A stretch of 64,000 nt of DNA from assembly GCA_002269645.1 (NCBI GenBank), contig NIVC01000262.1:313412-377411 (forward strand), read 5' to 3'. The translations under genes were made by a program, and so were the position numbers. This DNA is from Macrostomum lignano. Its lineage: Eukaryota. Position 1 is the stretch's first letter; every line of letters begins with the position of its first letter. A model generated the notes under the pieces. The model was not told the DNA's origin. It ran no database searches and saw only the letters and a list, made by a program, of their open reading frames with translations. Positions 20,782-60,970 of this stretch are shown one piece after another.

Positions 20782-20854
<73 letters not shown>

Positions 20855-41529: not shown

Positions 41530-43875
41530 TGTCAGTAGATTAATAACTTGTGTCAGTAGATTAATGATTTGTGTCAGTGGGTTTATGATTTGTGTCAGTA
41601 GATTTTTATTTGTGTCAGTAGGTTTATGATTTGTGTTAGTAAAGTAATGATTTATGTCAGTAGGTTTATGAATTGTGTCAGTAAATTAATGATTTGTGTC
41701 AGTAGGTTTATGAATTGTGTCAGTAAAGTAATGATTTGTGTCAGTAGGTTTATGAATTGTGTCAGTAAATTAATGATTTGTGTCAGTAGGTTTATGATTT
41801 GTGTCAGTAAAGTAATGATTTGTGTCAGTAGGTTTATGAATTGTGTCAGTAAATTAATGATTTGTGTCAGTAAAGTAATGATTTGTGTCAGTAGGTTTAT
41901 GAATTGTGTCAGTAAATTAATGATTTGTGTCAGTAAAGTAATGATTTGCGTCAGTAGTTTATGATTTGTGTCAGTAAAGTAAGGATTTATGTCAGTAAAG
42001 TAATGGTTTGTGTCAGTAAGTTTATGATTTGTGTCAGTAAAGTAATTATTTGTGTCAGTAGGTTTATGAATTGTGTCAGTAAAGTAATGATTTGTGTCAG
42101 TAAAGTAATGATTTGTGTCAGTAAAGTAATGATTTGTGTCAGTAAAGTAATTATTTGTGTCAGTAGGTTTATGAATTGTGTCAGTAAATTAATGATTTGT
42201 GTCAGTAGGTTTATGATTTGTGTCAGTAAAGTAATGATTTGCGTCAGTAGTTTATGATTTGTGTCAGTAAAGTAATGATTTGTGTCAGTAAGTTTATGAT
42301 TTGTGTCAGTAAAGTAATTATTTGTGTCAGTAGGTTTATGAATTGTGTCAGTAAATTAATGATTTGTGTCAGTAGGTTTATGATTTGTGTCAGTAAAGTA
42401 ATGATTTGTGTCAGTAGGTTTATGAATTGTGTCAGTAAATTAATGATTTGTGTCAGTAGGTTTATGAATTGTGTCAGTAAATTAATGATTTGTGTCAGTA
42501 GGTTTATGAATTGTGTCAGTAAATTAATGATTTGTGTCAGTAAAGTAATGATTTGTGTCAGTTGTTTATGATTTGTGTCAGTAAAGTAAGTATTTATGTC
42601 AGTAGGTTTATGATTTGTGTCAGTAAAGTAATGATTTGTGTCAGTAGGTTTATGAATTGTGTCAGTAAATTAATGATTTGTGTCAGTAAAGTAATGATTT
42701 GTGTCAGTAGTTTATGATTTGTGTCAGTAAAGTAATGATTTGTGTCAGTAAAGTAAGGATTTATGCCAGTAAAGTAATGGTTTGTGTCAGTAAATTAATG
42801 ATTTGTGTCAGTAGGTTTATGATTTGTGTCAGTAAAGTAATGATTTGTGTCAGTAGGTTTATGATTTGTGTCAGTAAAGTAATGATTTGTGTCAGTAGGT
42901 TTATGAATTGTGTCAGTAAATTAATGATTTGTGTCAGTAAAGTAATGATTTGTGTCAGTTGTTTATGATTTGTGTCAGTAAAGTAAGGATTTGTGTCAGT
43001 AAAGTAATGATTTGTGTCAGTAAAGTAAGGATTTATGTCAGCAAAGTAATGATTTGTGTCAGTAAAGTAATGATTTATGTCAGTAAAGTAATGATTTGTG
43101 TCAGTAAAGTAATGATTTGTGTCAGTAGTTTATGATTTGTGTCAGTAAAGTAATGATTTGTGTCAGTAGGTTTATGAATTGTGTCAGTAAATTAATGATT
43201 TGTGTCAGTAAATTAATGATTTGTGTCAGTAAAGTAATGATTTGCGTCAGTAGTTTATGATTTGTGTCAGTAAAGTAAGGATTTATGTCAGTAAAGTAAT
43301 GGTTTGTGTCAGTAAGTTTATGATTTGTGTCAGTAAAGTAATTATTTGTGTCAGTAGGTTTATGAATTGTGTCAGTAAAGTAATGATTTGTGTCAGTAAA
43401 GTAATGATTTGTGTCAGTAAAGTAATGATTTGTGTCAGTAAAGTAATTATTTGTGTCAGTAGGTTTATGAATTGTGTCAGTAAATTAATGATTTGTGTCA
43501 GTAGGTTTATGATTTGTGTCAGTAAAGTAATGATTTGTGTCAGTAGGTTTATGAATTGTGTCAGTAAATTAATGATTTGTGTCAGTAAAGTAATGATTTG
43601 TGTCAGTTGTTTATGATTTGTGTCAGTAAAGTAATAATTTATGTCAGTAAAGTAATGATTTGTGTCAGTAAAGTAATGATTTGTGTCAGTAGTTTATGAT
43701 TTGTGTCAGTAAAGTAATGATTTGTGTCAGTAAAGTAAGGATTTATGTCAGTAAAGTAATGATTTGTGTCAGTAAAGTAATAATTTGTGTCAGTAAAGTA
43801 ATAATTTATGTCAGTAGAGTAATGATTTGTGTTATTAGAGTAATGATTTGTGTTATTAGAGTAATGGTTTGTGTC
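41530..43875. repeat. 21-bp minisatellite, about 2.3 kb, start of BRCA2 intron 4
   Basis: Unit atgatttgtgtcagtaaagta (the MICVSKV pseudo-ORFs). Confidence 0.96.
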
Positions 43876-44080
43876 AATCGATTGTTTGTTTGTGTCACTA
43901 TCTATGTATTTATTAGTGTTTAGTTACATTTATACAAAGTCGCAACAATTTGATTTCGCATTGTCCAGTTTACATGGTGCAAGGTACTGTTGCGTATAAT
44001 AAGCCTGTTTGATCCCTTTGGTGACAAAAGTACATAAGTTAGTAATTTGACTGTTTAGTTCATAGAATTTGCAAGCTAGA

Positions 44081-47000
44081 CTAAAAAATCGTGATGCTCT
44101 TCTTCAAGTTCGCCTCAGCGATTCGATGCAGCACTTCTTTGAACAGGGGCTTCATGCTGTCAATGTCTATGGCCGTGATGAGGTGCGTGTAGATTCTCTT
44201 GGACTTTGGCATGTTCTTCGGTATGAGGCTGGTGAACTTCTCTTTGATGTACTGCGCGCACTGGTTCACCTCGTCGTGGCCTGGAGATTGAGGACGATTG
44301 AGGAGGATCAAACTTGATGTCTCGATTCTGTTTGTTCGTTGTTCCCTATATTAAGGCGATTTTCTCATATATTCAGGGCGATTTTCTTAGATAATCAGGG
44401 CGATTTTGATGGATAATCAGGGCGATTTTGATGGATAATCAGGGCGATTTTGATGGATAATCAGGGCGATTTTGATGGATAATCAGGGCGATTTGCTTGG
44501 ATAATCAGGGCGATTTTGATGGATAATCAGGGCGATTTTGATGGATAATCAGGGCGATTTTGATGGATAATCAGGGCGATTTTGATGGATAATCAGGGCG
44601 ATTTGCTTGGATAATCAGGGCGATTTTGATGGATAATCAGGGCGATTTTGATGGATAATCAGGGCGATTTTGATGGATAATCAGGGCGATTTTGATGGAT
44701 AATCAGGGCGATTTTGATGGATAATCAGGGCGATTTTGATGGATAATCAGGGCGATTTTGATGGATAATCAGGGCGATTTTGATGGATAATCAGGGCGAT
44801 TTGCTTGGATAATCAGGGCGATTTTGATGGATAATCAGGGCGATTTTGATGGATAATCAGGGTGATTTGCTTGGATAATCAGGTCGATTTTCCTGGATAA
44901 TCAAGGTGATTTGCTTGGATAACCAGGGGCGATTTCTCTGAAACATCTCACCTCGATAGTCCGGAAACAGTCCTGTAATACTCTTGGACTTCAACTTCTG
45001 CTCGAACACGTCCAATTTGTTTAAGAACAGAAAGAAATCCTTCTTCCACAGGTACTTGTTGCTGATGATCTCGCTGAATGTTGATAGACAGTCGGACATT
45101 TTAATTGTCTGGAGAATGTACAGATGGATTGTCTGTTTATGACATGATTTATGATGATCAATGATTTAGAAAGACGTGCGTGGTTTCTCACCGTTCTGTC
45201 CTCCTCTTCGACAAGCTCGCCGAAGCCAGACAGAGAGCTGACGAATAGCACTGCGTTGACGTCTTCGAAATAGTGAATCCACTTGTGCCGCTGGCTTCTC
45301 TGGCCTGCCAGATCGATCATGCTGTCGTTTTGAATGAAAATTGGGCGGATTTTTATTGCAGATAAATTGATTGACTTGGCTGATGATATCCAGATGTGAT
45401 GAAAAAGCCAAGGAGGTCGGACACAGATAGACAGGGGGTGCGCACAGATAGGGGTGTACACAGATAGACAGGAGGTGTACACAGATAGACAGGGGTGTAC
45501 ACAGATAGACAGGGGGTGTACACAGATAGACAGGGGGTGTACACAGATAGACAGGGATGTACACAGATAGACAGGGGTGTACACAGATAGACAGGGGTGT
45601 ACACAGATAGGGGGTGTACACAGATAGGGGGTGTACACAGATAGACAGGGGGTGTACACAGATAGACAGGGGGTGTACACAGATGATTCAGATTCAAGGA
45701 GGTGGACACAAAACATTTTAGGGAGTTGAATTTAGGGAATTTAGGGAAACAGACACATTGGAGGCTGGGAGGTGGACACAGCGGATGCAAAAAGGTGGAC
45801 TCAACAGCGACCGGGAAATGGACACAACAGCGACAGAGAGCCGGACACACACAGCGACAGAGAGCTGGACACACACAGCGACAGAGAGCTGGACACACAC
45901 AGCGACAGGAAGATGGACATAACAGCGACAGAGAGGTAGAAACACACAGCGACAGGAAGATGAACACAACAGTGACAGGAAGATGGACACAACAGTGACA
46001 GGAAGATGGACACAACAGTGACAGGAAGATGGACACAACAGTGACAGGAAGATGGACATAACAGCGACAGGAAGATTGACATAACAGCGACAGAGAGGTG
46101 GACACACACAGCGACAGGAAGATGGACACAACAGTGACAGGAAGATGGACATAACAGCGACAGGAAGATGAACACAACAGTGACAGGAAGATGGACATAA
46201 CAGCGACAGGAAGATGAACACAACAGTGACAGGAAGATGGACATAACAGCGACAGGAAGATGAACACAACAGTGACAGGAAGATGGACACAACAGTGACA
46301 GGAAGATGGACACAACAGTGACAGGAAGATGGACATAACAGCGACAGGAAGATTGACATAACAGCGACAGAGAGGTGGACACACACAGCGACAGGAAGAT
46401 GGACACAACAGTGACAGGAAGATGGACATAACAGCGACAGGAAGATGAACACAACAGTGACAGGAAGATGGACATAACAGCGACAGGAAGATGAACACAA
46501 CAGTGACAGGAAGATGGACATAACAGCGACAGGAAGATGAACACAACAGTGACAGGAAGATGGACACAACAGTGACAGGAAGATGAACACAACAGTGACA
46601 GGAAGATGGACACAACAGTGACAGGAAGATGGACATAACAGCGACAGGAAGATGGACATAACAGCGACAGAGAGGTGGACACAGCGGATGCAAAGAGGTG
46701 GACACAACAGTGACAGGAAGGTGGACACAGCGGATGCAACGAGGTGGACACAGCAGCGACCAGTAAATGGACACTACAGCGACAGGGAGGTGGACAAAGC
46801 GAGTACAAAGAGGTGGACACAGAAGCGACAGGAAAGTAGACACAGAACATTCTGCATCCGCTTTAAGCTCACCGAAAAGTGGTGCCAGCAATTTGAAATT
46901 CGGTCTGTCTGACTGCGTCGCTCGGCTTGCGAATGGCCAAAATATCTTGCAGCGTTGGCACATAGTCCTCTTGAATGACGCGATCCACGTGTTGTATAAA

Positions 47001-50000
47001 GCTGTAGATTTATTTAGATTGGTGATCTTTATTTTACAGAGCCTTAAACATTTTAGTAAGTTTTTAGTGTTTTAAGTTAAAATTGTCGCTAACTTGAAAA
47101 CTGTAATCAGACTGATGTTGAATCACCCTTTAGGGCAATGAGAATCACACTTTAGGGCAATGAGAATCACACTTTAGGGCAATGAGAATCACACTTTATG
47201 ACAATGAGAATTACATTTTATGGCAATGAGAATCACCCTTTAGGGCAATGAGAATCACACTTTAGGGCAATGAGAATCACACTTTATGACAATGAGAATC
47301 ACACTTTAGGGCAATGAGAATCACCCTTTAGGGCAATGAGAATCACACTTTAGGGCAATGAGAATCACACTTTATGACAATGAGAATCACACTTTAGGGC
47401 AATGAGAATCACACTTTATGACAATGAGAATCACACTTTAGGGCAATGAGAATCACCCTTTAGGGCAATGAGAATCACACTTTAGGGCAATGAGAATGAC
47501 ACTTTAGGGCAATGAGAATGACACTTTAGGGCAATGAGAATCACACTTTATGGCAATGAGAATCACACTTTAGGGCAATGAGAATGACACTTTAGGGCAA
47601 TGAGAATGACACTTTAGGGCAATGAGAATCACACTTTAGGGCAATGAGAATCACACTTTAGGGCAATGAGAATCACACTTTAGGGCAATGAGAATCACAC
47701 TTTAGGGCAATGAGAATCACACTTTATGGCAATGAGAATCACACTTTAGGGCAATGAGAATCACACTTCAGAGCAATGAGAATGACACTTTAGGGCAATG
47801 AGAATGACACTTTAGGGCAATGAGAATCACACTTTATGGCAATGAGAATCACACTTTAGGGCAATGAGAATGACACTTTAGGGCAATGAGAATCACACTT
47901 TAGGGCAATGAGAATGACACTTTAGGGCAATGAGAATGACACTTTAGGGCAATGAGAATGACACTTTAGGGCAATGAGAATCACACTTTAGGGCAATGAG
48001 AATCACACTTTAGGGCAATGAGAATCACACTTTATGGCAATGAGAATCACACTTTAGGGCAATGAGAATCACACTTTAGGGCAATGAGAATCACACTTTA
48101 GGGCAATGAGAATCACACTTTAGGGCAATGAGAATCACACTTTAGGGCAATGAGAATCACACTTTAGGGCAATGAGAATCACACTTTAGGGCAATGAGAA
48201 TCACATTTTATGGCAATGAGAATCACCCTTTAGGGCAATGAGAATCACACTTTAGGGCAATGAGAATCACACTTTATGACAATGAGAATCACACTTTAGG
48301 GCAATGAGAATCACCCTTTAGGGCAATGAGAATCACACTTTAGGGCAATGAGAATCACACTTTATGACAATGAGAATCACACTTTAGGGCAATGAGAATC
48401 ACACTTTATGACAATTAGAATCACACTTTAGGGCAATGAGAATCACCCTTTAGGGCAATGAGAATCACACTTTAGGGCAATGAGAATGACACTTTAGGGC
48501 AATGAGAATGACACTTTAGGGCAATGAGAATCACACTTTATGGCAATGAGAATCACACTTTAGGGCAATGAGAATGACACTTTAGGGCAATGAGAATGAC
48601 ACTTTAGGGCAATGAGAATCACACTTTAGGGCAATGAGAATCACACTTTATGGCAATGAGAATCACACTTTAGGGCAATGAGAATCACACTTTAGGGCAA
48701 TGAGAATCACACTTTATGGCAATGAGAATCACACTTTAGGGCAATGAGAATCACACTTCAGGGCAATGAGAATGACACTTTAGGGCAATGAGAATGACAC
48801 TTTAGGGCAATGAGAATCACACTTTAGGGCAATGAGAATGACACTTTAGGGCAATGAGAATGACACTTTAGGGCAATGAGAATCACACTTTATGGCAATG
48901 AGAATGACACTTTAGGGCAATGAGAATGACACTTTAGGGCAATGAGAATGACACTTTAGGGCAATGAGAATCACACTTTAGGGCAATGAGAATCACACTT
49001 TAGGGCAATGAGAATCACACTTTATGGCAATGAGAATCACACTTTAGGGCAATGAGAATCACACTTTAGGGCAATGAGAATCACACTTTAGGGCAATGAG
49101 AATCACACTTTAGGGCAATGAGAATCACACTTTAGGGCAATGAGAATCACACTTTAGGGCAATGAGAATCACACTTTAGGGCAATGAGAATCACACTTTA
49201 TGGCAATGAGAATCACACTTTAGGGCAATGAGAATCACACTTTAGGGCAATGAGAATCACACTTTATGGCAATGAGAATCACACTTTAGGGCAATGAGAA
49301 TCACACTTTAGGGCAATGAGAATCACACTTTAGGGCAATGAGAATCACACTTTAGGGCAATGAGAATCACACTTTAGGGCAATGAGAATCACACTTTAGG
49401 GCAATGAGAATCACACTTTAGGGCAATGAGAATCACACTTTAGGGCAATGAGAATCACACTTATGGCAATGAGAATCACACTTTAGGGCAATGAGAATCA
49501 CACTTTAGGGCAATGAGAATCACACTTTATGGCAATGAGAATCACACTTTAGGGCAATGAGAATCACACTTTAGGGCAATGAGAATCACACTTTAGGGCA
49601 ATGAGAATCGCTGCCCTACTGAACTAGTCACTATTGAATATAAAAAAACAGATTAACAATCAAGAGGACAGCTAGACTGTCGGTCAGACCCTCTAAAAAC
49701 AAACGAAGTAACTCACTACATCTCGGCGTAGGTAATCTCCGGCTTGAAGTACTCGTGATCAGCGAGGCACAATTCGAACTCCGGCTGCACAATGCAGTTC
49801 TTTATGTGTCGCACGAAGCAGAACACGATTTCGTCGTGAGGCGGCAAGCCGTCCAGGGTTGACGAGGCGCGCCGACCTCCCGAGGAGCCGGTGTCGTGCG
49901 CGTCGCCTAGGTGAAGGTGCTCAACCAGCCTGGCGCAGCTGCTGTCGGAGCTGCCATCGTCCAGCTGGTTCAGTCCGGCATCCTCTCCGCTCAGGTTTTG

Positions 50001-53000
50001 CAGTTGTTGGCGTCTTTGACGTCTGGAGAATTTGCCAAATTCCAGACTGCTAATGTAGGTCCTGGCCGTGTGCGTCTCTCGCTCACGGTCTCGGTCGTCC
50101 GCTTCGGACTGGCTGTCCTCGAGGCCCTGCGGTGTTTTTATATATCGGATAGAAAGGACCTTGAGTTCAAATTTGTGTCCTTGAGCAAGACACTTTACTC
50201 TGCATTGCTGCAGTTCACCCAGCTGTAAAATGGGTGCCAGTCCTTGGACTGAACAGCCGTACGCAGCCTTTAGAGGCGCCGGGCCGCGCTAAACAAGGAC
50301 AAAAATGTGCATTCACATGCTTGAAATGACCTTATAGTTACATTAATTCACATTTATGAGGACCAAAATGTACTAAGATTTTAATGTGCGCTTGTACAAT
50401 GACCTCATTTAACATGTAGAAGAAAACATGAAGTTCCATTTTTACAACTGAACAGATTGTAAACAGATTATCGATTTCGATTCTAACCTTCAACTATGCC
50501 TAATAAATTAAGTTGGTATGCAATTTATTAGATATTGATTTACGCTCGTAAAAGTTTAAGAGATGATGGATGTGATGAGAGAAGAGATGAGAAAGAAGAT
50601 AAGAGGAGAGGAAATACTCGTAAGAAAGGAGATAAAAGGAGATAGGAGAGAGAATAGAAGAGGCTTTAAAGGAGAGATATGAGAAGACACAAGGCTTGAG
50701 CCGGCCGAATTGCTATTTCAACCATCTCAAACTAAAACACATACTGGTTTTTTATAATCCCGTGGACTTCTTATTCTTTATCTATTTAATACGATGCTCC
50801 AAAAAGACTCATCCGGTGAGACGCGTCTTTCTCACCTGCGTATTATAATAGATTATTAACGAAGCTGACGCCGTGTCGCCTCCGTTGCCGTCCCCACCCG
50901 AAGCCAGTCCGTCAAGTCCGTTCAAGTCTAAGTTGTTTCGCCTGGCCTCTCGGTAGCTAACATCGAATAACAGTAGTTCATGCGCGTTGTCGTGACCGCA
51001 ACTGCTAGGCAGATCGGTGTCAGTCGGCGCCGATGCCAGCGTATCGTCGTCCACAAAATCAACGTGCGCGTAGTGAATGCTGTTCTCAATGTCCACTTGT
51101 TTGCCGGAGTGGCGAAATATTTGACTGTTGAATTTCGGACAGTAGGCTTGGAATTCTTCAACCATGTCCTGGTTGGGTGCGCGATTAACAATGGTCTTAC
51201 ATCTCCGTGTGAGTTGCATTCCATGCGGGGCCACAGAATTCGTGTCTGGTGTATGAATATTTGCCTGGGGCTTGTTCAAGAGAACCAACTCCAAAACCCT
51301 GGCACTGAGGAAGTGAGCCCTTGAATTTTTGCGGTTCCCTAAAGCCACAGCTACACAAGTACAGAGACATGAGGGGCGCACTAAAGATGCACTGCAGCCC
51401 CGACTTTGTCTGCCATGGGTCGAGCAAAAATATCCCAATATGTGGATTCAAATTTGATGTAGCTACGCCTGGAATCGAGCGAAAGCCTTCTGGCCCAAGT
51501 CCTCTGATAGATAATTTCTAGAATTTCGAAAAAGTCCCTTTGACCAACAACAGCTGCAATCAAACTTTGATGTAGAATAAAAAACCGCTACCTTCCTACC
51601 TTGATGTAGGGATCGTGAAACCAGATGTCCCTAGTGCGCATATTCTCCAGCACAATGTGCACCGCATCTGCTAGATTCTCCAGCACCTGACCGATCAGCG
51701 CCTTGCGTTGCTCGTCCGGGAATGCGTCTCCGTAGTGAATTCGAAACTGTTTCACTAACGTACTCTTGCCGCATCCGTTGCCGCCTAAGTTAATGTCAAA
51801 AAGTGAAATCTGGATTAAACGTTAATATACGTTTTGGTTGAAAAAAACTTGGCAGTTAAAAAATCTAAAGGAATAGCGCTATGTAACGGATAATATGAAT
51901 GAATACTGTCATTTTAATTTCATAAAATTAAACTTAAATTAAACTTCAGCATAAACTTAAACTTAATAGTGAGACACTCTTTTATTGATAGACACACTTA
52001 TAGACTGTATACACATTTTAGCCTGTCGAGAGACGCACTACAGATGCCGTGAGACACGTTCCGAACTCTCAAAAGGGCACTTTAGACTGAGGTAAAAACA
52101 CTTTGTCGAGAGACACACTTCAGATTGCGACAGACACACTTCATGCTGTGGTAGACACACTTCATGCTGTGGTAGACACACTTCAGGCTGTGGTAGACAC
52201 ACTTCAGGCTGTGGTAGACACACTTCAGGCTGTGGTAGACACTTCAGGATATGGTAATCACACTTCAGGATATGGTAGACACACTTCAGGATATGGTAGA
52301 CACACTTCAGGCTGTGGTAGACACACTTCAGGCTGTGGTAGACACACTTCAGGCTGTGGTAGACACACTTCAGGCTGTGGTAGACACACTTCAGGATATG
52401 GTAGACACACTTCAGGCTGTGGTAGACACACTTCAGGCTGTGGTAGACACACTTCAGGCTGTGGTAGACACACTTCAGGCTGTGGTAGACACTTCAGGCT
52501 GTGGTAGACACACTTCAGGCTGTGGTAGACACACTTCAGGCTGTGGTAGACACACTTCAGGCTGTGGTAGACACACTTCAGGCTGTGGTAGACACACTTC
52601 AGGATATGGTAGACACACTTAAGACGTCGAGGTATTTGGAATTATTAGATGTTTAAGAAAGAAACTGTTTTAACGTGTGTCGTGTTGTACTAGAGTAAAA
52701 AACAAACCAATCAGCAGCAGGTGAATCTCCTTGCGCTTGGCTTCCTGGTCAGTCAGCAACAGCTGGTCAATTTGCTTCGAACGCATCAGAGCCCTCTTCT
52801 GAGCCAGCTTGTTGATGCTGTTAAAATGATCCGATATCTGTAAGAAGTTTTGATGCGAGTTGAATAAGAGATCTCTAAGTCCTCAGCGGGTGTCTCTTGC
52901 GTGTACCCAGGTATCTGCCAACCAGACGTGAGTTGACGGGAGAAGGACTGTTTGGCGCTTTTTAAATCCTCTGCAGAAACCGGCTCGTAACTCGAGCCGT

Positions 53001-54387
53001 CATCATTTCCTTAACACACTGAATTTGGCATTTCGCACTATAGATTGTTGGAATCGAAGAATAGGGAAGAAAACTACGAGCTAGTTGGTATTCCCAACCA
53101 CTACTCATTTTCCTAAGCACCCCACGCCGAATTTATTCCAATATATATTTGCTTATCTTCTAATCAAATATAGCTATAATGCGTGCCATAACTCAAAATA
53201 GAAAATTTAGTACTGGATAATTGAATTTCAATCGCAATTAGGGAACAAGCGTTGTTATATGCTTATAAAAATATGCGCGTTTCCCATCCTTTTTTCATAG
53301 TCAATTTCTTTATCTCTTCTTCAGCATAATTGGGCGCCCCAATGTTCTATAGGGGAATTAATACGGCCGAGCAATTGATAGTTTTGAAAAAGAATTGTTT
53401 GATTGCAATCTTATTGACTTGTATTCATATTTGATCATTATTTATAGTTACAGTCGGCTACAGCTACCTACCAGTGATGAAATGACATTGAGAACTTATC
53501 CCTACTGACATCTCAACCTTCATCCCTAATGAAATCTCGTCTTTATTGATATTGAATCTCCACTGAGCTCTTATATTCACGGAAGTATAATCTTTACCTT
53601 CACCTTAACTCTATTTCTTTCTCATGTTATCTACTAATATCTGATCTCTAGTGAGATCTCATCTCTACTATCATGGCATCTTCACTGACAGCTTTTTATT
53701 ACACCTGCCTTAATAGGCAGATGTAGCTCGTACAACCGGCCATTGTGGCACGCATCTGAAGGCTGTTTGCGGCTGTTGAGTCTAAAATCTGTGGTTTGCC
53801 ATCGCCACACAAGCCCTCAATTACCCCAGGTAATGCTGTCATCCATTTTACAGCTGGGTGAACTGAAGCAATGCAGAGTTGAGGTGTCTTTCTCAAAGAC
53901 ACAAGTTGTTCCGAGTGGGTCGAGAACCGAATCCCCTAACCAGTAGGCTACAACCCCCCCCCCCTCTGCTTGATGCACATCTTGTGGCCTCCGATCTACT
54001 TACTTTTTTACTTGTGTGCCTCTTGGACGATGCGATAGCAACCAGACTGGCCTTCTTAGCCAGCACCCGTCTGCCTCCAGCCACTCCGCCGCTGCCGCTC
54101 CCGCCGCCACCATGGCTCGAAAATCTCTTGCTTCCGCCAATAACTGTACCGGCTCTTCTTAGCTTTCTCCTTCGCTTGTTGTTGCTGCTGCTGCTGTTTG
54201 AGGCTGCCGCTGGTGCCGATGCTGTTGCTGACAGTGCCGTAGTGACTGCAGCCGTCGATGAAGAAGTTGAAGCCTCCTCTACTATGGTAGCATCGATCGT
54301 GTCTCCTTGTGTCACCGTCGGCTTTTGCTGCTTCCATTCGTCGTCGTCTTTTGGTACGAGGCAGATTCGTTCCTCATTGTCGCTCAT
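44081..54387 (-). CDS. Divergent extra-large heterotrimeric G-protein alpha subunit, 9 exons, about 717 aa, nested antisense in BRCA2 intron 4
   Basis: Exons (-): 54387-54004, 52837-52708, 51784-51600, 51264-50836, 50126-49717, 47001-46873, 45321-45192, 45108-44952, 44280-44081. All GT-AG, phases match, total 2154 nt = 718 codons including stop. Motifs: RSKQID, LLLIGGNGCGKST, YVPTLQDILAIRKPS, DLAGQRSQRHKWIHYFEDVNAVLFV, FLNKLD, IYTHLITAID, ANLKKSITIF*. Confidence 0.88.
44370..44930. repeat. 22-bp minisatellite, G-alpha intron 8
   Basis: Unit cgattttgatggataatcaggg. Confidence 0.95.
45420..46840. repeat. Two adjacent minisatellites (20-21 bp and 23 bp), G-alpha intron 6
   Basis: gtacacagatagacagggg(g)t at 45420-45685; acacaacagtgacaggaagatgg at 45765-46840. 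Confidence 0.92.
47120..49608. repeat. 22-bp minisatellite containing TTTAGGG, about 2.5 kb, G-alpha intron 5
   Basis: Unit cactttagggcaatgagaatca, on the order of 110 copies. Confidence 0.97.
50165..50290 (+). mobile_element. CORE-type SINE fragment with internal deletion
   Basis: tgtgtccttgagcaagacactttactctgcattgctgcagttcacccagctgtaaaatgggtgccag joined directly to tccttggactgaacagccgtacgcagcc. Confidence 0.7.
52105..52622. repeat. 21-bp minisatellite, G-alpha intron 2
   Basis: Unit cacacttcaggctgtggtaga. Confidence 0.94.
53705..53940 (-). mobile_element. CORE-type SINE copy, diverged, 5'-truncated
   Basis: Plus strand reads ...ccattttacagctgggtgaactgaagcaatgcagagttgaggtgtctttctcaaagacaca, the reverse complement of the CORE segment. 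Confidence 0.7.
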
Positions 54388-55121
54388 CTTTGCGGAGGAA
54401 ATCCGACAGCTGGTTTAGTGGGCTGGCCAGCTCTCGTTTGTAAACTGTATTGCCGGTGTCAGATTACAGCGGATTTTCCTGCCGCAATGCTAAAATATTA
54501 AAGGCCATTTGTTGGCTGCGTCTCAAGGCCTATCACACCAGCTTTCGATTTTATTCGCCCGTGCTCGACTGTGTGTACCTTCGACTGACGCACCTCGTCC
54601 TTCCTTTTTTCCTTTTCTTCCCCTTTCTCCCTCGTGTCAAGGAGGCCCACAGCTAGAACTTGGCGTGCTAGGATTGAGTAAACAAATAAAAACGCAAAAA
54701 ACAAGAACCTTCCTCTATCCCAGTCTGCGAGTTTCTGACTGTTTCGAGTCATTTTGTTTGAACTTTTAAGTATAAAGTACTTAAATCTGGAGGTGTAAAA
54801 ATTGGATTGGTTCAGATTAGAAACTAAAGTGTGTAGAAAATCATGCCAAAAACACAGAGAAAACATTTTAAAATGACAGTGTGGTAATTGGGACATGCCA
54901 AGGTTCGTGTGGGAAATGCTGAGATGTCAAGGCTCATTGGGGGGAATTGCTGAAATTCTGTGGCTCTTGGTGGTTACTCAGATGTTTTGAGCCAAAAAAA
55001 CTCATAGGGAATCTCATATCTTCAGCTAGATAGCTGTTTCTCAAGACTGATGCTGCTTTCCTTTAAACATCATTTTCCTGAAGAGATTAGCAATACGCTC
55101 GTACTGACTTGACTGTACTAC

Positions 55122-55392
55122 GGCTGTTGTAGCCTAGTGGTTAGAGCGTCGGACTCACAATTTGAAGGTCAGGGGTTCGATTTCCGATCCCACTGAAACA
55201 ATTTGTGTCCTTAAACAAGACACTTAACTCTGCATTGCTTCAGTTCACCCAGCTGTAAAATGGGTGCCAGCATTAGCTGGGGTAATTGAGGCTGTGTGTG
55301 TGGCGACTCCCCAGTCCTTGGACTGAACAGCCGTACGCAACCTTCAAATGCGCCGCGAAATAGCTGCGGCTGAGCTGTCGGTTGCACATCAA
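55122..55392 (+). mobile_element. tRNA-derived CORE-type SINE, near full length
   Basis: A box tagcctagtggttagagcg, B box ggttcgatttcc, then tgtgtccttaaacaagacacttaactc...cagctgtaaaatggg resembling the MIR/CORE domain. Homologous copies elsewhere in the window. Confidence 0.75.
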
Positions 55393-56883
55393 AATACTTA
55401 CATGTAGTTACTTACATATAGTTTACTCAAAACTGTTATTCCTTTCTTTGTTGCGTCACCAACAGAAGGAGCGCAGATTGCTAGTTCCTTAAACACAATT
55501 AACTGCATTCTGAGCAATATAAATGCGACCTAGTAATAAAAGAGAAGTTAAAAGACACTAAGCTACAATCAAGTTTTATAGTTGTCCAAAAATGTAAGGC
55601 TTGAATAAGAGTTGTCAGTCCAAGTTCTGAGTCTCCTTGCCCTCTCCCAACCACCTCCTCATTCTTATGCACTGTCATTATCTCCCATTGAAAAGCAAAC
55701 CGAACAAAATTCAATCCCAAGCCCCTGCAGTCTTCTCCCTTCTATGTATTATTATATACACGCTCGTATATAAATCAGTGCCTCTTTGCAACCAATCAAC
55801 TCTTCGAACCGGTCGAAGCTCTGGAATTTGGTGCCTCCGCATTTTACTTTCTTCTATCTCTATCATTCCTATTCTATTTGAGTCTATACTGCTCAGAATC
55901 CCTATATATCACCCCTCACCATTTGCCTCTGGCCTATTCATTTCCGCCTTATTCTCATTCGGAACTTCACATTCCCCAGTTTCTTATAATTGCTCACTCG
56001 CTCTCTCTCTATCCGATCTAGCTCCTGTTGGTCTCTCTCTCTCTTTCTTTCCCATTTATGGCTCCCCCTCCCAACGATAAGATGGGACAGCGCGAGTTTG
56101 GTGGCTTCAACCTCTATAGCTATGGGCATTTTAATCAAACTGCCAATGCGCTCAAGACTTTCGAATATAGAATCTATATAGTTCTTATAGTATAAGTGTG
56201 AGCGCTATCGATGCCGCGATTGAATGGGTCCTATCTATCTCACTACTGTCTGACACTTTGCCTCCATTCGATTCATTAACCCCCCCTCCCCCATAGCAAC
56301 CCCAAACTTCGTCGCTCGGCTTCTTATCGACAGGCAAATTAATCTTCTCCCTCTACGGCAAGAGAGAAGGACGATCGGTCTTATATGGAACTGGAGCTGG
56401 GATTCTGTGTTTAGCGACTGGGGCCGCTTCATCATCATCTTGTTTAAAGTACCCACTGTCTTAAATTTTCATTTAAAACCAACCAAGTGTAAAAACTATT
56501 ATTCACTTGTTTATATTTTTTCTAGAAAAATTGACAAGAACTTTTCCTGTTAGTCTGTTACAAAGCTGTCTGTTAAAAAATTGAAAATTATATTGTATCA
56601 TTTAGCTTAATGTTATTATAGAGAATAAATAAACTTAAAACAATACTGTATGTTTTACGTACAGTTTTTACTTTAGAAAAAATAATCTTTGTCTCAGTAA
56701 GATATCGCTTAAATTCTAGGATTTCTCGTTCTGTGCAAACAGTTACAAAGTTCTTGTGGGCCGTATTAACGAAGGAGGGCAGTGCTAAACAAAAACTATT
56801 CACAACTTTTAAAAAGTTATTGAAATTCACTGTTATTTGATAATAATAGTTAGGATGCGTCTTCATCATCGGCCATGGTTTCC

Positions 56884-59800
56884 TCACTTGACTGACAGCG
56901 GGTTTCTCTTAGTATTGGCCCTCTCGTTCGTCGGTCTCTGCCGATACTCCACCCCGATGCCGTCCACGACCGCCCGATTCTTGCGCGTCTCCGTCTGGCT
57001 CTCCTCGCCCAGAACCCGGCGACCCTCCTCGCTGACGACCTCCTGCGTGACCGTGAGAAGTTTCAGCATCTTATTAATCTTTAGAATTCTAGCCACCTCT
57101 TTGCAAGCTCTCGTGTCCATTGGCACCTGGCGTAAGAATAGCTTCTCAAGCTTGTTATTAATTTTCAGCGCTTCGGATAGAGAGAAGAAGCAGACATTGT
57201 CCAGGCGGATTCCGCTCAAATCCAGCAGGACAATGGTCCGATTGCTAGAGAATGCGGCGATGAAAGTGTTAAAGGCCATCGCATCAATCTTGAGGTTAGC
57301 CAAGATCAGGCCTTCTAGACTCTTGCTCTCCATCAGCTTTCCGTTGAGATCCTGCGATGCCACTATGCTCATCTGGCAGCCAGAAAAGTCTAGAATGCGC
57401 AGGTTGTCCGCAAATTTAGTTGGCAAATTTTTTATTATGCTTCCAACCAGCGACATGTGGTGACAATTTTGAAATGCGAACGTTTCTAGTTTAGTCATGT
57501 TCGAGCAGGCTTCGCGCATGTTGTTTAGCATTTTTGGCGACAACTGGTCCAGCTTCTTTCCTGACTCGTCGATGCACTCAAGATTCTTCAGATGAAAGCC
57601 GGTCTGATCGGGCTTCTTACGCCTGATTTCCATCTGGCCTGTAGAATTGGCGGGGTCCTCTGGCTCCGGACAGCACACGGTTTGAAGGAAGTCTGCCATT
57701 AGATCCTTCTCTGTCCAGTAGATGCGGAGCGTCTTGATGTGAACGTTCGTTTTCATTGCGGTAGCCAGACTTTTGTATGCCTCAAGCGTCTCTTTGGCTA
57801 GCAGATCTAGGCGCAAGTCCACCTCTTGGATGGTCGTGTGGTTAAACTTGATCATCTTGGACAGGCCTGTAAGCGACAATCTCGGAATGATGCCCTCGTG
57901 CTTCACGGTGAATCGCTCTGGCAGCGATTCAACAATTTTCTTGCCAAGATCTCTGCGGGCCATGTCCATGACCGCCACGCATTCCAGACTGAGCTGGTAG
58001 TCCATGATCTTGCCCTCGACCAGTTGACTGTCTTCTGGCGACGTAGCCGCTGGCATTTTCATGCGACTCGCTTTGCCTCGCCGTTTGTTATACTGCAGTA
58101 TCTTTGCAAACAGTTCCCGGGTGGCCGGCGTGTCGTTGTCCGACTTGCGGATGCTGCAGTAGAACACAACAACATTGTAGGAGATCGGAGTCATACTCAT
58201 GTTCTGGAAGAAGCGGCTAGCTTCATCTGTTCCACTAGTGTCTAGATTTTTCGCGGCGAGATACTCTTGAATAAGACGATTGCCAAACATGTAGCGCTGG
58301 TTATCCTCTGCGGTGAGGTTTGTAGCCAGTTGAATCAGGCCGAACTTAGTCATCATGTGGTCCTCCTTGGCCAAAATGAAAGTTGCGCTGCCTTTCTTTA
58401 TGGTGTCCATAGCGCGTTCGGACAGCATTGCGTAGGCGCGATTCGCTTCGAAGCGACTCTCCTTTTCGCGTTCGATCAGCTTCAACTTGATGCAGGAGAC
58501 AAACTGTTCCACAATTGTTGTCGGAGAGTTCAGATCGATACTCATGCGCATGTCGGTCAGCAGGCAGAAGAACGAACAGTACAAAGGCACCTGTGAGTAA
58601 TGTCGCAGGGACGCTATTTTGCTTTGATTTGAATTTTCACCGTTTGAATCCTGTTGTTGCTGCTGATCGTTTCCTTGACCCTTGCTAGAGCTGCGGCTTA
58701 GTTTTGTGCTGACTTTGTCCGTGTTTTCCCTCTCCAAAGGTCGCTCGTCTCTGGGCTTTGCCGAGGTCACAGATGTCGCCGATTCTGACGACCCGCGTCG
58801 CCTCTGCGGCTCCTGCGACTTTTTCGCTGCATCCAGCAGCTTTTGAAGCTCAGTTGATTTTTTTGCCACTACTAGCTTGTTTAGAAACGAGGAAAAGTGT
58901 TCCCACGGCTTCTTAGCTAGTTTGACGTACTTCTGAACGTACTCCTCTGCCTGGGATTTGGCGAATCCGGTCAGAATTACCTTGCGCTGGTAGCGGTGCA
59001 TCAGTCTGACTGTAAAGTTAGTCTGACTAAATACCAGAATGTGCAGTTCCGGCATGATGTTCTCAAATAGCAAACTCTTCATCTCATCATTTAGATTGTC
59101 TTCGTAGCCATCTATGATGAGCAGTGTGCTCGCCTGGTGCATGTTCATCACCTCCCAAATTTCGCGTTCGGCCAGCTTGCAGTCGCCTCCGAAAAGCTGT
59201 TCCATCATCATCACTTTCACTGTGGGCGCTGTTACTTTAAGATCAAGCAAGATTAGCAGTTGGAAAGGCCGTCCGAATACGTTTTCGTCCAAAGACCATT
59301 TGTAGGCCATATACTTAGCCAGCGTACTCTTCCCTGTTCCAGGGTCACCCTCAATAACTACTGTATGCGGGTCTTTTTCGCCTTCCTTATAATCAAAAAC
59401 TTGGAAGGCGTTGACTGACTTTCTGCAATTTTAAATTGAGAAATCAAAGTTGAAAATTATGTCTTGCTTAATGATCTGATCTGTTTTCCTGCTACTTACC
59501 CATTCAAATTGAGCAGCTGCTGTTGGCAGTAGAATTCGGCAATGTCTGTTTCAACTTTAGTGTACCATGGAATCGGATTCCATTTGGCGTACGCGGTGGA
59601 GTACCGCTCTCGAAGAATGTTGTTACAGTAAGGTAGACCCTCTGAAGAAACAGAAGAAACAGAAAAATCCTGTGATCAACTCTTAGAAGAGGATTTACTA
59701 ATTATTATAAATACTTACGTGGTTTATTAGCAAGGATGTCGGCCTTAGCGGCCTGGTAGTCCTGGTGCATCTGCTGGTACACCTGTTCGTTCTTGGGTTT

Positions 59801-60970
59801 CAGCGATTCAACGAACTCATCCAACACATTGCCAGATTTTGGCACTAGAAAGTCGATCAACGTCGACATCTGCTCGTTGTTGCGCAGAGTAGAAAATATT
59901 TCCGTGCTCTCGTCTTGGGTAATAATCTCCTTGTTCATCAGATGCTCAACCACTGTGTCCGCTTTTACATCGTTGAGCAGCTGTTCGTAGTACTTGTCGA
60001 GAATTAGGCGCTCCGCTAATACCATGCCAGTTTTGATATGAGCCCATCTATGACAGCGCGACTTGTCGCTCATGTCCATCGTCGCCTTTCCAACAACCGA
60101 CTGGCGTTTTTCGTTTCCGACGTGTCCAAATCGCGCGTCTTGAGCCGTTTCTGCAGAATAGGAATCTCTTCGCGCTTCTTCTTTCGTTCTTGGTTTTCGA
60201 TTTCTCTCTTCAACTGGCTGACCTCTTGGCGGTACCAGACGAGGAATTCGCCCAGAATGAAGCGCGATTCAGTCTCGTCCATGCTAGTGTCCTGCTTGTA
60301 TGCGTTCATACAGTCTGCTGCACCCGAGTGTCCCAGTCGCTGGAGCTGCTCGGCAATGCGGCTAAACAGTCTGTTAGCCGCGCTCGCCTTTAAGGTCTGC
60401 AGCGAGGCGAGCTCGCGTTGAATGCCCAGTAGGCGTTGCAGCGCTGCGCCCTGGCTGTCATCGCGAGGTTCCGGATCTCCCATCCAGCCGTTTGGCTGCG
60501 GCTTCGTCACATCGCAGGTGTATTTTACTAACAGGAGCAGCAGACGCAGGTCGTAGTTGTCAGCGGACACGGAAGATTTCTCCTTCGGGTAGAGCGTCTG
60601 CCAGTCGTCTTCGGTTAGCATGTCTTTGATCTTAAGTCGCCTCAGCGTCCGGTGAATGTCCGGCGAGGCCAAGTGTTCCGTTAGCTCGTCCGTTGGATGC
60701 TTGGAATCGAATAGGCTTCTCAAGCACGCCTTGCCCTCTCGCATGAGAAAGTGGCACACTCTGGATAGGTTCTCTACGCTCCTCTCGTCGGTCATGTCCA
60801 ACTGCAGCTTGGGCGTGTTGTCTACCACGCCGAACTGAAATTTTGGATGTCATTAACCAATGTTAAAATGCAGCATTTTAGTAAAGTATCCAACAGTTAG
60901 ACAGTTAGTAACTCACAACCACTTGATTTTTCGGCCGAGCGGCCAAGGTCATTCGACGAACTTCTGGCAT
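56884..60970 (-). CDS. NLR: HEPN(DZIP3-like)-coiled coil-CARD-NACHT-LRR, about 1283 aa if the frame break is repaired; nested antisense in BRCA2 intron 4
   Basis: Exons (-): 60970-60917, 60834-59719 (one base short of phase), 59641-59500, 59422-56884; introns 82, 77, 77 nt. HEPN-like WQTLYP...YDLRLLLLL...GWMGDP...D.S; CARD-like LILDKYYEQLLNDVKADTVVEHLMNKEIIT; pre-NACHT RERY...PIPW; Walker A VVIEGDPGTGKST; Walker B LLIIDGYED; FGNRLIQEYLAA; RI-like LRRs. Confidence 0.85.

What the first reader, a model, noticed from the sequence alone, without database searches (positions are those of the whole stretch)
44081..54387. Extra-large, class-unassignable G-alpha (about 717 aa), roughly twice canonical size
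Seen: nine exons join in phase into one ORF with all five G-box regions in order. It has a 128-aa Ser/Thr/Ala/Gly-rich first-exon extension with a polybasic KRRRKLRR stretch and no Gly2, and a C-terminal tail NLKKSITIF that is one residue longer than the Gi/Gq tails and has no -4 Cys. Known: canonical G-alpha is about 350-395 aa, and the C-terminal tail sets receptor coupling. Extra-long forms are known as mammalian XLalphas and plant XLGs. Inference: this may be an independently evolved XL G-alpha defining a lineage-specific class, with non-myristoyl membrane or nuclear targeting.
Basis: partly seen in the sequence, partly recalled or inferred. Interest (0 to 1): 0.8.

Follow-up and report, generated by a model that had tools for sequence, protein, structure and literature searches.

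The report
Long flatworm-type sixth-class G-alpha gene
This is a real nine-exon gene for a G-protein alpha subunit that belongs to the little-studied sixth animal class (GalphaVI, coral "Gc", planarian Galphax1), and its unusual length comes from a large insertion in the helical domain, also seen in parasitic flatworms, plus an unverified N-terminal exon.

Summary
Nine minus-strand exons (54387 to 44081), all GT-AG and in phase, give a 717-aa G-alpha with G1-G5 motifs, no Gly2, KRRRKLRR at residues 71-78 and the tail NLKKSITIF.

The protein falls outside Gs, Gi/o, Gq, G12/13 and Gv, but it is not a lineage-specific class. In NJ trees it groups 200/200 with planarian Galphax1 and long (593-751 aa) trematode and cestode G-alphas. 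That clade groups with normal-sized brachiopod and mollusc proteins (190/200) and a Nematostella G-alpha (200/200). This matches the taxon distribution of the "GalphaVI" class named in a 2023 preprint (coral Gc, 2012).

Lack of Gly2 and the basic tail are class traits. The Fasciola orthologue shares the exon architecture (185/129/130/157 nt, same phases) and carries its insert at the same helical-domain site.

The window protein keeps all catalytic residues, unlike its degenerate parasite relatives. Exons 1 and 4 (271 of 717 aa) have no homologue support. They rest on ORF, splice-site and codon-usage evidence, so the true product could be 574 aa or shorter. No transcript data were available.

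Verdict: a new variant of a known kind, moderate interest.

The parts
54004..54387 (-). Exon 1: ATG plus 128 codons, an S/T/A/G-rich N-terminal extension with KRRRKLRR (aa 71-78) and Cys9; donor GTAAGT, phase 0
   Evidence: Codon log-odds +0.26 against a background maximum of -0.07. No homologue has this extension. Exon 2 has no in-frame ATG upstream, and the alternative first exon 55508-55416 scores -0.24.
52708..52837 (-). Exon 2: alphaN helix up to LLLI+G, ending in the phase-1 P-loop intron
   Evidence: Family HMM hit iE 1.9e-9. Same intron position and phase as Fasciola exon 1.
51600..51784 (-). Exon 3 (185 nt): P-loop GGNGCGKS, QFRIHYGDAFP, alphaA; ends phase 0 after DPYIK
   Evidence: HMM iE 6.9e-27. 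Fasciola exon 2 is also 185 nt with the same phases.
50836..51264 (-). Exon 4 (429 nt, phase 0 to 0): first part of the helical-domain insert, 143 aa with no detectable homologue; a frame-neutral cassette
   Evidence: no significant similarity. Codon log-odds +0.14 in frame against -0.18 and -0.46 in the other frames, and above all 453 background windows. This is the least certain exon.
49717..50126 (-). Exon 5 (410 nt): about 95 aa of acidic, Ser- and Arg-rich insert continuous with the conserved alphaD-alphaE segment (IVQPEFELCLADHEYFKPEITYAEM); ends phase 2 inside a Tyr codon
   Evidence: The tail against planarian Galphax1 scores 74 with 0/1000 shuffles reaching it. Codon log-odds +0.56 for the insert part. 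Same phase-2 Tyr-codon split as Fasciola.
46873..47001 (-). Exon 6 (129 nt): alphaF and switch I (VDRVIQEDYVPTLQDILAIRKPSDAV)
   Evidence: HMM iE 3.5e-20. The Fasciola exon is also 129 nt.
45192..45321 (-). Exon 7 (130 nt): G3 and switch II (DLAGQRSQRHKWIHYFE)
   Evidence: HMM iE 5.3e-17. The Fasciola exon is also 130 nt.
44952..45108 (-). Exon 8 (157 nt): G4 NKLD
   Evidence: HMM iE 8.8e-16. The Fasciola exon is also 157 nt.
44081..44280 (-). Exon 9: G5 (ITAID), alpha5, tail NLKKSITIF and stop codon
   Evidence: HMM iE 1e-17.
43909..43914 (-). AATAAA polyadenylation-signal candidate, 167 nt after the stop

Best explanation
The locus encodes a heterotrimeric G-protein alpha subunit of the sixth metazoan class: GalphaVI of a 2023 preprint, Gc of coral, Galphax1 of the planarian. 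It is the orthologue of the long G-alphas of trematodes and cestodes.

Shown here: the gene structure, the G-alpha domain, clade membership, shared exon architecture, the shared insertion site, and retention of all nucleotide-binding and catalytic residues (GKS, Arg178, Ser at 181, DxxGQ, NKxD, TAxD in Galphai1 numbering).

Inferred from established G-alpha biochemistry:
- It works as a receptor-activated GTP switch. GDP-bound alpha binds Gbeta-gamma through alphaN and switch II (largely conserved, Trp211 and Lys210 present). A GPCR engages the alpha5 helix and the basic C-terminal tail. The only tested class member, coral Gc, was activated by an opsin in vitro. The GTP form signals to an unknown effector.
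- Hydrolysis is probably slow, because Asn replaces the Ras-Gly12-equivalent Gly42, as non-Gly residues do in slow Galphaz.
- It is probably RGS-insensitive, because of Thr182Asp and Gly183Ala, the position of the classical RGS-resistant G183S/G184S mutants.
- Membrane attachment cannot use myristate. It probably relies on polybasic stretches and perhaps palmitoylation of Cys9.
- The roughly 115-258-aa extra segment sits in the alphaB-alphaC region of the helical domain, far from the nucleotide, receptor and Gbeta-gamma surfaces. This is a region where engineered GFP insertions are tolerated. It is most likely a flexible regulatory or docking loop.

The source organism is probably an early-branching flatworm or close relative.
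For: Exon model and motifs. Closest proteins are long trematode G-alphas. The exhaustive profile search finds the long family in six trematode genera and in cestodes, plus normal-sized relatives in brachiopod, snail, mussels and Nematostella. NJ bootstraps: window + Smed-Galphax1 + Neodermata 200/200; plus lophotrochozoans 190/200; plus Nematostella 200/200. Gv (with zebrafish gnav1), G12/13, Gq and Gi each form separate supported clades. Fasciola has the same exon sizes and phases, a Gq/Gi-type seven-exon core rather than the G12 type. Family signatures QFRIHYGDxFP and VDRxIQEDYVPTLQDIL are shared, as is the insert site. Literature: GalphaVI occurs in Anthozoa, Spiralia and Branchiostoma. Coral Gc lacks the Gly/Cys lipidation sites and is activated by acropsin 1. 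Planarian Galphax1 is unclassifiable and expressed in peripheral neural cells. Codon-usage support for exons 1, 4 and 5.
Against: There is no transcript evidence for any junction. Exons 1 and 4 have no homologue. The planarian orthologue is normal-sized (54 aa between anchors against 258 here), and all relatives have short N-termini. The window insert shows no robust similarity to the neodermatan inserts (best z = 3.0), so a common origin of the expansions is unproven. The tree is NJ on 344 columns with long branches, not ML. Equating Nematostella A7RLH8 with NvGalphaVI rests on elimination and matching motifs, because the preprint gives no accession. The GTPase rate, RGS insensitivity, lipidation, effector and receptor are all inferred, not measured.
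Confidence: 0.8

Rival explanations
1. The gene is real but the 717-aa model is over-extended. The main product lacks exon 4 (574 aa), or lacks exon 1 and starts at Met146 (572 aa), or lacks both (429 aa), making it a medium or near-normal-sized GalphaVI protein.
For: Exons 1 and 4 hit nothing in the family HMM or pairwise tests. Exon 4 is 429 nt, phase 0 to 0, so skipping it is frame-neutral. The planarian orthologue and all normal-sized class members have short N-termini and 42-71 aa between the helical anchors. Exon 4 has the weakest codon score.
Against: Both exons exceed all 453 background windows in codon log-odds and score best in the predicted frame. Donors are GTAAGT and GTGAGA with phase-matched acceptors. 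Exon 2 has no upstream in-frame ATG, and the only other candidate first exon with a consensus GTAAGT donor scores as non-coding. Even without exon 4, exon 5 carries about 95 insert residues in one ORF with the conserved tail. Neodermatan orthologues show that inserts of about 280-400 aa exist at this site, in Fasciola within a single 998-nt exon.
Confidence: 0.35
2. One reading: an independently evolved extra-large G-alpha that founds a lineage-specific class.
For: It is only 26-32% identical to human Gi, Gq, G13, Gs and zebrafish Gv over the core. No protein in the searched collections scores above about 243 bits against it, and the closest core identities are 36-46%. The N-terminal extension is unique.
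Against: It nests 200/200 within a clade containing planarian, trematode, cestode, mollusc, brachiopod and cnidarian proteins. It shares exon architecture and insert site with Fasciola. The class has already been proposed in the literature.
Confidence: 0.04
3. It is a divergent G12/13-class member, as the database name "G protein subunit alpha 12a" of the Terebratalia relative suggests.
For: The source name of P0020. The switch I pattern R-K/R-P resembles RRPTKGI of G13. The preprint places GalphaVI as a weakly supported sister of Gq+G12.
Against: G12/13 forms its own 200/200 clade that excludes it. Identity to human G13 is the lowest of all classes, at 26%. The gene has the Gq/Gi-type exon borders, whereas preGNA12 is a retro-derived three-exon gene.
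Confidence: 0.04
4. It is a decaying pseudogene or non-functional copy.
For: There is no expression evidence. The introns are swollen with minisatellites. Parasite orthologues have degenerate catalytic motifs.
Against: The ORF is intact across nine exons, all splice sites are canonical, every catalytic residue is conserved, coding-type codon usage is present in every exon, and a polyA signal follows the stop.
Confidence: 0.05

Closest known systems
GalphaVI (bioRxiv 10.1101/2023.09.14.557824), also called coral Gc (Mason et al. 2012, PMC3515558)
   Same: Same supported clade, through the Nematostella member (200/200). No N-terminal Gly2/Cys lipidation motif. P-loop without the canonical Glu43. 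Basic NL(K/R)(K/R) tail. About 30-40% identity to other classes. Found in Cnidaria and Spiralia.
   Different: Described members are normal-sized (about 360-390 aa). The window protein has a 128-aa N-terminal exon, up to 258 aa where they have 42-71 aa in the helical domain, switch I PSDA instead of PTxG, and one extra residue in the tail.
Planarian Smed-Galphax1 (dd_Smed_v6_22522; Jenkins and Roberts-Galbraith 2023, PMC10078920)
   Same: Closest sequence found, 46% identity over the core. Shares EFFKPSITYADLYFIQ..DR.IQ.DY.PTLQDI, DPY(V/I) after alphaA, and IYTH..DID.MK. The authors also could not assign it to a class.
   Different: Normal-sized: 54 aa between the helical anchors and a short N-terminus. 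Gln204 is replaced by Tyr, whereas the window keeps Gln. Its sequence is known here only from a machine-read alignment in the supplement.
Uncharacterised long G-alphas of Neodermata, for example Clonorchis "alpha-15 subunit", Fasciola D915_002867, Opisthorchis CRM22_002084, Calicophoron, Trichobilharzia and Taenia (593-751 aa)
   Same: Same subclade (200/200). The large insert is at the same helical-domain site (283-407 aa). Identical exon sizes and phases in Fasciola. Switch I is PS.A(V/I).
   Different: They lack the N-terminal extension. Their catalytic machinery is degenerate: P-loop GKN or GRS, DxxG Gly lost, switch II Trp211 lost, and Arg178 lost in some. The window protein is intact. 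The insert sequences are not detectably similar, and Fasciola encodes its insert in one exon where the window uses two.
Mammalian XLalphas (GNAS locus)
   Same: A large, low-complexity N-terminal exon spliced onto a G-alpha core. Membrane association does not depend on myristate.
   Different: The XLalphas core is Gs, and its XL exon replaces exon 1. Here the extra exon is added upstream of a complete alphaN helix, the core is GalphaVI, and half of the extra length is inside the helical domain.
Plant extra-large G proteins (XLG1-3)
   Same: Over-long G-alpha-like proteins with a basic NLS-like motif in the N-terminal region.
   Different: XLGs have a roughly 400-aa N-terminal Cys-rich domain and a G-alpha-like domain lacking conserved catalytic residues. 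The window N-terminus has a single Cys and its G domain is canonical. The two origins are unrelated.
Galphaz
   Same: Non-canonical P-loop (GTSNSGKS) with a non-Gly residue at the Ras-Gly12-equivalent position, which is associated with very slow GTP hydrolysis. The window has Asn at that position.
   Different: Galphaz is a myristoylated Gi-class retrogene of normal size. The similarity is functional analogy only.

Membership tests
Heterotrimeric G-protein alpha subunit (Pfam PF00503) | Profile score above the curated cut-off | tested here: met
   262.2 bits against a cut-off of 48.8, in two stretches split by the insert. PDB Go, Gi and Gq chains match at E about 1e-49.
Heterotrimeric G-protein alpha subunit (Pfam PF00503) | G1-G5 nucleotide-binding motifs, catalytic Arg (switch I) and Gln (switch II), and a helical domain inserted between G1 and G2 | tested here: met
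   GGNGCGKS, R-K-P-S, DLAGQ, NKLD and TAID are present. The helical-domain elements alphaA and alphaD-F align.
Heterotrimeric G-protein alpha subunit (Pfam PF00503) | Binds GTP, Gbeta-gamma and a GPCR | not testable with these tools
   This needs biochemistry. Only sequence conservation of switch II, alphaN and alpha5 is seen.
GalphaVI / Gc class | Monophyly with the cnidarian (Nematostella, Acropora) and spiralian members, separate from the five classical classes | tested here: met
   NJ 200/200 with Nematostella A7RLH8, brachiopod and molluscs. Gi, Gq, G12/13 and Gv clades are separate. Caveats: the method is NJ only, and A7RLH8 is equated with NvGalphaVI by elimination.
GalphaVI / Gc class | No N-terminal Gly2/Cys3 lipidation motif | tested here: met
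   The window starts MSDNEE. All clade members lack Gly2. This is reported for coral Gc.
GalphaVI / Gc class | Activated by an opsin or other GPCR | not testable with these tools
   Shown in vitro only for coral Gc with acropsin 1.
Flatworm Galphax / long-G-alpha subclade | Signature VDR(I/V/L)IQxDYxPTLQD, switch I P(S/T)xx(V/I), and the family exon pattern 185/129/130/157 nt | tested here: met
   Subclade bootstrap is 200/200.
Flatworm Galphax / long-G-alpha subclade | Large insert between alphaA and alphaD of the helical domain | tested here: met
   258 aa in the model (115 without exon 4), against 283-407 in Neodermata. The planarian member has only 54, so the trait is not universal in the subclade.
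Gi/o class | Gly2 myristoylation, Cys at -4 of the tail, clustering with Gi/o | tested here: not met
   No Gly2, tail NLKKSITIF, and the Gi clade (193/200) excludes it.
Gq/11 class | Clustering with Gq; (E/D)YNLV tail | tested here: not met
   The Gq clade (173/200) excludes it and the tail differs. Only the seven-exon core gene structure is Gq-like.
G12/13 class | Clustering with G12/13; retro-derived gene structure with few exons | tested here: not met
   The G12/13 clade (200/200) excludes it. Identity to human G13 is 26%. The exon borders are of the Gq/Gi type.
Gs class | Clustering with Gs; YELL tail | tested here: not met
   28% identity to human Gs, with no grouping. Only one Gs reference was in the tree.
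Gv class | Clustering with zebrafish gnav1 | tested here: not met
   The clade of gnav1 with insect "G(o)-like" proteins (200/200) excludes it.
Mammalian XLalphas / plant XLG | Gs core with an alternative XL first exon (XLalphas); N-terminal Cys-rich domain plus a degenerate G-alpha domain (XLG) | tested here: not met
   The core is not Gs. Exon 1 has one Cys and no Pfam domain. The G domain is canonical.

The most novel reading that the evidence does not exclude
The nine-exon, 717-aa product is real. It is a catalytically competent extra-large GalphaVI protein carrying two lineage-specific flexible modules: a polybasic, NLS-like N-terminal extension and a helical-domain loop of about 250 aa. 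It would represent the still-functional stage of an evolutionary series. That series runs from normal GalphaVI (cnidarians, molluscs, planarian) to the giant-insert, apparently GTPase-dead pseudo-G-alphas of parasitic flatworms. The helical-domain insert would be a gained docking or regulatory platform rather than junk.
Probability: 0.3. Interest if true: 0.6.

Novelty: new variant of a known kind. Interest (0 to 1): 0.45.

Why it matters
GalphaVI/Gc is an almost unstudied sixth class of animal G-alpha. It is absent from vertebrates, insects and nematodes, and its effector is unknown.

This locus shows three things:
- The unclassifiable planarian Galphax1 and a set of anonymous 590-750-aa "hypothetical proteins" of liver flukes, blood flukes and tapeworms belong to that class.
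- The class tolerates expansions of hundreds of residues in the alphaB-alphaC region of the helical domain.
- A version exists that combines the long architecture with an intact catalytic site.

That version would be the natural protein to express for asking what the class couples to and what the insert does. The parasite orthologues, with broken P-loops and switch II, may be pseudo-GTPases specific to Neodermata. None of this changes the basic picture of G-protein signalling, so the interest is moderate.

Tried and rejected
1. Word-indexed protein search with the full 717-aa model returned nothing, because low-complexity words flooded the candidates. It worked after those regions were removed. 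A profile version added no new members.

2. The spliced model could not be submitted to the exhaustive search, the exact-protein look-up or structure prediction. I used in-frame exon pieces aligned to trematode proteins instead.

3. Exact look-ups of two neighbouring single-exon ORFs, meant to identify the organism, found nothing. Rfam found no RNA gene in the window. The organism remains unidentified.

4. Hypothesis that exon 4 is a diverged tandem duplicate of the helical-domain exon (exon 5), or a mutually exclusive alternative to it: rejected.
- Exon 4 against exon 5: Smith-Waterman score 36, reached by 119/1000 shuffles.
- Exon 4 against the planarian segment: score 29, reached by 302/1000 shuffles.
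- Only an insignificant HMM echo remains (iE 9.3).
- From my reading of the sequence, no phase-compatible donor exists that would let exon 4 replace exon 5.

5. Homology between the window insert and the neodermatan inserts is not supported. The best z is 3.0 among five tests, and trematode against cestode inserts are themselves barely similar.

6. Alternative first exons: a scan restricted to near-consensus donors found 55508-55416, which has a perfect donor but non-coding codon usage of -0.24. It was rejected as less likely than exon 1. The same scan also listed ATG-started ORFs at 56869/56866 with weaker donors (GTAACT, GTACGT), which were not scored for coding potential, and a 6-aa ORF at 53842-53825.

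7. Internal phase-0 acceptors in exon 5 that could trim the insert: all have poor polypyrimidine tracts.

8. AlphaFold2 of the Fasciola long form, to see whether the insert folds: pLDDT is below 50 across residues 108-391. This is weak evidence for disorder, given only 12 sequences in the alignment.

9. Literature searches for a described long or insert-bearing flatworm G-alpha found none.

Full report
OBSERVATION.

The finding lies on the minus strand. Three-frame translation of 54700-43900 and inspection of every exon boundary gave an explicit model. It has nine exons: 54387-54004, 52837-52708, 51784-51600, 51264-50836, 50126-49717, 47001-46873, 45321-45192, 45108-44952 and 44280-44081. All introns are GT...AG and phases are consistent.

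Pfam G-alpha scores 262 bits in two stretches separated by a long unmatched segment. The best solved structures are Go, Gi and Gq chains at E about 1e-49.

Residue 2 is Ser, the only Cys in the first 128 residues is Cys9, and KRRRKLRR occupies residues 71-78. The tail is NLKKSITIF. An AATAAA lies 167 nt after the stop. The introns are filled with 21-23-bp minisatellites.

HOW SOLID IS EACH EXON?

I built a family HMM from eleven relatives, without the window sequence, and ran it against every stop-to-stop fragment on the minus strand of 43000-56800. It hits exons 2, 3, 6, 7, 8 and 9 at iE 1e-9 to 1e-27 and the tail of exon 5 weakly. Nothing else is hit, so no exon was missed.

Exons 1 and 4 match no homologue. 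I scored them with a codon-usage log-odds trained on the conserved exons and two unrelated ORFs of the window:

- Exon 1 scores +0.26 bits per codon.
- Exon 4 scores +0.14.
- The insert-encoding first 95 codons of exon 5 score +0.56.
- 453 background windows from non-repeat intron and intergenic sequence have a mean of -0.50 and a maximum of -0.07.

Exon 2 has no in-frame ATG upstream of its acceptor. A scan restricted to near-consensus donors found one other candidate first exon with a perfect donor, 55508-55416, and it scores as non-coding. Two further ATG-started ORFs near 56869 with weaker donors were listed by that scan but not scored.

Exon 4 is 429 nt, phase 0 to 0, so skipping it would keep the frame and give 574 aa. 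The nine-exon product is therefore the best model. However, 271 of its 717 residues lack comparative or transcript support.

RELATIVES.

With low-complexity regions removed, the closest proteins are 622-633-aa "hypothetical" G-alphas of Opisthorchis, Fasciola and Clonorchis, followed by about 360-aa insect "G(o)-like" proteins.

An alignment shows that the fluke proteins share QxRIHYGDxFP, VDRxIQEDYVPTLQDIL, a P-S-x-A switch I and a basic tail with the window protein. They also carry a roughly 300-aa insert at the same place in the helical domain.

An exhaustive HMMER search of 1.84 billion representatives used a profile of window exon pieces plus fluke proteins, and source names came. It found two groups:

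- The long form, in Calicophoron, Trichobilharzia, Dicrocoelium, Taenia and Echinococcus.
- A set of normal-sized proteins that are the best direct matches to the window model: snail Candidula (393 aa), brachiopod Terebratalia "G protein subunit alpha 12a" (382 aa), the mussels Potamilus and Sinanodonta (389 aa), an unnamed transcript (362 aa) and Nematostella A7RLH8 (316 aa, probably partial).

No protein scored above about 243 bits against the window model, and the closest core identities are 36-46%. The source species is therefore not represented.

CLASS ASSIGNMENT.

GNAI1 was verified against a database protein. Zebrafish gnav1 came from a paper's supplementary table.

Bootstrapped NJ trees on 344 conserved columns gave:

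| Clade | Support |
|---|---|
| Window + planarian Galphax1 + Neodermata | 200/200 |
| The above + brachiopod, molluscs | 190/200 |
| The above + Nematostella | 200/200 |
| Gv (gnav1 + insect proteins) | 200/200 |
| G12/13 | 200/200 |
| Gq | 173/200 |
| Gi | 193/200 |

The clade's deeper attachment is unresolved (25% or less).

Core identity of the window protein is 46% to the planarian protein, 36-41% to the normal-sized members and 26-32% to the five classical classes.

Within the subclade the topology is (window, (planarian, (cestode, trematodes))), with planarian plus Neodermata grouping without the window in 412/500 replicates. This suggests, but does not prove, that the window comes from an early-branching flatworm or a close relative.

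LITERATURE.

[quoted passage not shown] That clade contains the Acropora palmata protein of Mason et al. 2012, multiple spiralians and one Branchiostoma sequence. It is absent from ecdysozoans, other deuterostomes and medusozoans, and the authors name it GalphaVI.

Mason et al. called the coral protein Gc. They noted 39-40% identity to known G-alphas and the lack of the N-terminal Gly and Cys lipidation sites. They showed light-dependent activation by acropsin 1 in vitro.

[quoted passage not shown] It is expressed in a subset of peripheral neural cells and has no RNAi phenotype. Its sequence in the supplementary alignments is plainly orthologous to the window protein.

The taxon distribution and traits of my clade match GalphaVI. 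The link through Nematostella A7RLH8 is by elimination, since that protein is 39% or less identical to every classical class, and by matching motifs. The preprint gives no accession.

I found no paper describing the long flatworm forms.

GENE STRUCTURE.

The Fasciola orthologue (locus L001) has seven coding exons. Their borders and phases are the same as in the window:

- a phase-1 split in the P-loop Gly codon;
- a 185-nt exon ending in phase 0 after alphaA;
- one 998-nt exon for the whole insert plus alphaD-E, ending in phase 2 inside a Tyr codon;
- then exons of 129, 130 and 157 nt, and the terminal exon.

The window gene is this core plus exon 1 and one extra intron that splits the helical-domain exon into exons 4 and 5.

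Lokits et al. 2018 report a seven-exon ancestral Gq gene that shares borders and split codons with Gi, and a retro-derived three-exon G12 gene. The family therefore has a Gq/Gi-type structure, not a G12-type one. This argues against the "alpha 12a" name of the brachiopod member. The matching human exon sizes (185/129/130/154) are from my own knowledge.

WHERE THE LENGTH COMES FROM.

I measured the segment between the end of alphaA and the alphaD-E anchor:

| Protein | Residues |
|---|---|
| Human Galphai1 | 33 |
| Normal-sized class members | 42-71 |
| Planarian Galphax1 | 54 |
| Window model | 258 (115 without exon 4) |
| Neodermata | 283-407 |

The inserts evolve fast. They are conserved among trematodes (z = 11). 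They are barely similar between trematode and cestode (z = 1.9), and not robustly similar between the window and any of them (best z = 3.0). Whether there was one expansion or several therefore stays open.

An AlphaFold2 model of the Fasciola protein has a moderately confident G-alpha core, but pLDDT is below 50 across the insert. That is consistent with disorder, although the alignment was shallow.

An attractive idea was that exon 4 is a diverged duplicate of exon 5. It failed shuffle tests and was dropped.

LIKELY FUNCTION.

The window protein keeps GKS, Arg178, Ser for Thr181, Asp200, Gly203, Gln204, NKLD and the G5 Ala-x-Asp (Galphai1 numbering). It also keeps most of switch II, including Lys210 and Trp211.

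The trematode and cestode proteins do not. They have GKN or GRS P-loops and have lost the DxxG Gly and Trp211, and some have lost Arg178. The planarian protein has Tyr for Gln204.

I therefore infer a working receptor-coupled GTPase, with the following further inferences from established G-alpha biochemistry, none measured here:

- Slow hydrolysis, because Asn sits at the Ras-Gly12-equivalent Gly42, comparable to Galphaz.
- Probable RGS insensitivity, because of Thr182Asp and Gly183Ala at the site of the classical RGS-resistant mutants.
- Lipid-independent, or Cys9-palmitoyl plus polybasic, membrane binding.
- A flexible insert in the alphaB-alphaC region, which is known to tolerate GFP insertions.

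Nuclear targeting through KRRRKLRR is possible but untested.

VERDICT.

But it is a member of an ancient, already proposed sixth class and of a flatworm subclade whose long forms already sit unannotated in public proteomes.

What is new is the combination of long architecture with an intact catalytic site, the candidate N-terminal exon, and the link drawn here between GalphaVI/Gc, planarian Galphax1 and the neodermatan long G-alphas.

Noticed in passing
window 43000-43876, 44369-44935, 45421-45684, 45792-46796, 47120-49609, 52111-52620: The introns and 3' flank of the G-alpha gene are packed with unrelated 21-23-bp minisatellite arrays. The largest is 113 copies of a 22-bp unit at 95% identity. 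Each array has its own unit sequence.
   Followed up: partly
window 56884-59310 (-) and 60070-60828 (-): Just upstream on the same strand there is an 808-aa ORF with a NACHT domain and an exon encoding a DZIP3-like HEPN domain. Together they look like one NLR-type innate-immunity gene.
   Followed up: partly
window 14672-16318 (-): An intronless 548-aa ORF for an amiloride-sensitive sodium channel (ASC/ENaC family, Pfam E 1.3e-38). The exact protein is not on record in the public collection.
   Followed up: partly
window 39270-40796 (+): A 508-aa ORF with four BRCA2 BRC repeats (Pfam E 1.5e-31), presumably one exon of a BRCA2 homologue. Its C-terminal end runs into a tandem repeat.
   Followed up: no
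window 8455-9012 (-): An ORF encoding a uDENN domain (E 5e-15), probably the first coding exon of a DENN-domain protein.
   Followed up: no
proteins P0001, P0002, P0015, P0016, P0019; locus L001 10001-45139: The trematode and cestode orthologues have lost residues essential for G-alpha function: P-loop GKN or GRS, DxxG Gly replaced by Leu, Glu or Asp, switch II Trp211 lost, and Arg178 lost in Taenia and Trichobilharzia. They may be pseudo-GTPases. The planarian Galphax1 has Tyr for the catalytic Gln.
   Followed up: partly
proteins P0004-P0010, P0012, P0060: Insect proteins that NCBI labels "G(o) subunit alpha-like" (about 360 aa, tails ending in TLL) cluster 200/200 with zebrafish gnav1. They are Gv-class proteins, not Go. 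A choanoflagellate protein (P0049) joins them at 194/200.
   Followed up: partly
protein P0020 (Terebratalia transversa AGJ70286.1): The brachiopod protein deposited as "G protein subunit alpha 12a" does not group with G12/13. It falls in the GalphaVI-like clade, so the name appears to be a misassignment.
   Followed up: partly
window 51133-51204 (exon 4) against 49722-49808 (exon 5 tail): The family HMM aligns a piece of exon 4 (RRCKTIVNRA...EEFQAYCPKF) to the same profile positions (395-418) as the conserved tail of exon 5. The score is insignificant (iE 9.3) and pairwise tests fail. It may be a faint trace of an old internal duplication, or just chance.
   Followed up: yes
window 6600-7900, 18500-21900, 34250-36400, 62000-63000: Long ORFs in several frames are produced purely by tandem or low-complexity repeats (for example CLSV, SLLS and HRFGHINS periodicities). 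They are not genes, but they show that the whole window is unusually rich in short-period tandem repeats.
   Followed up: no
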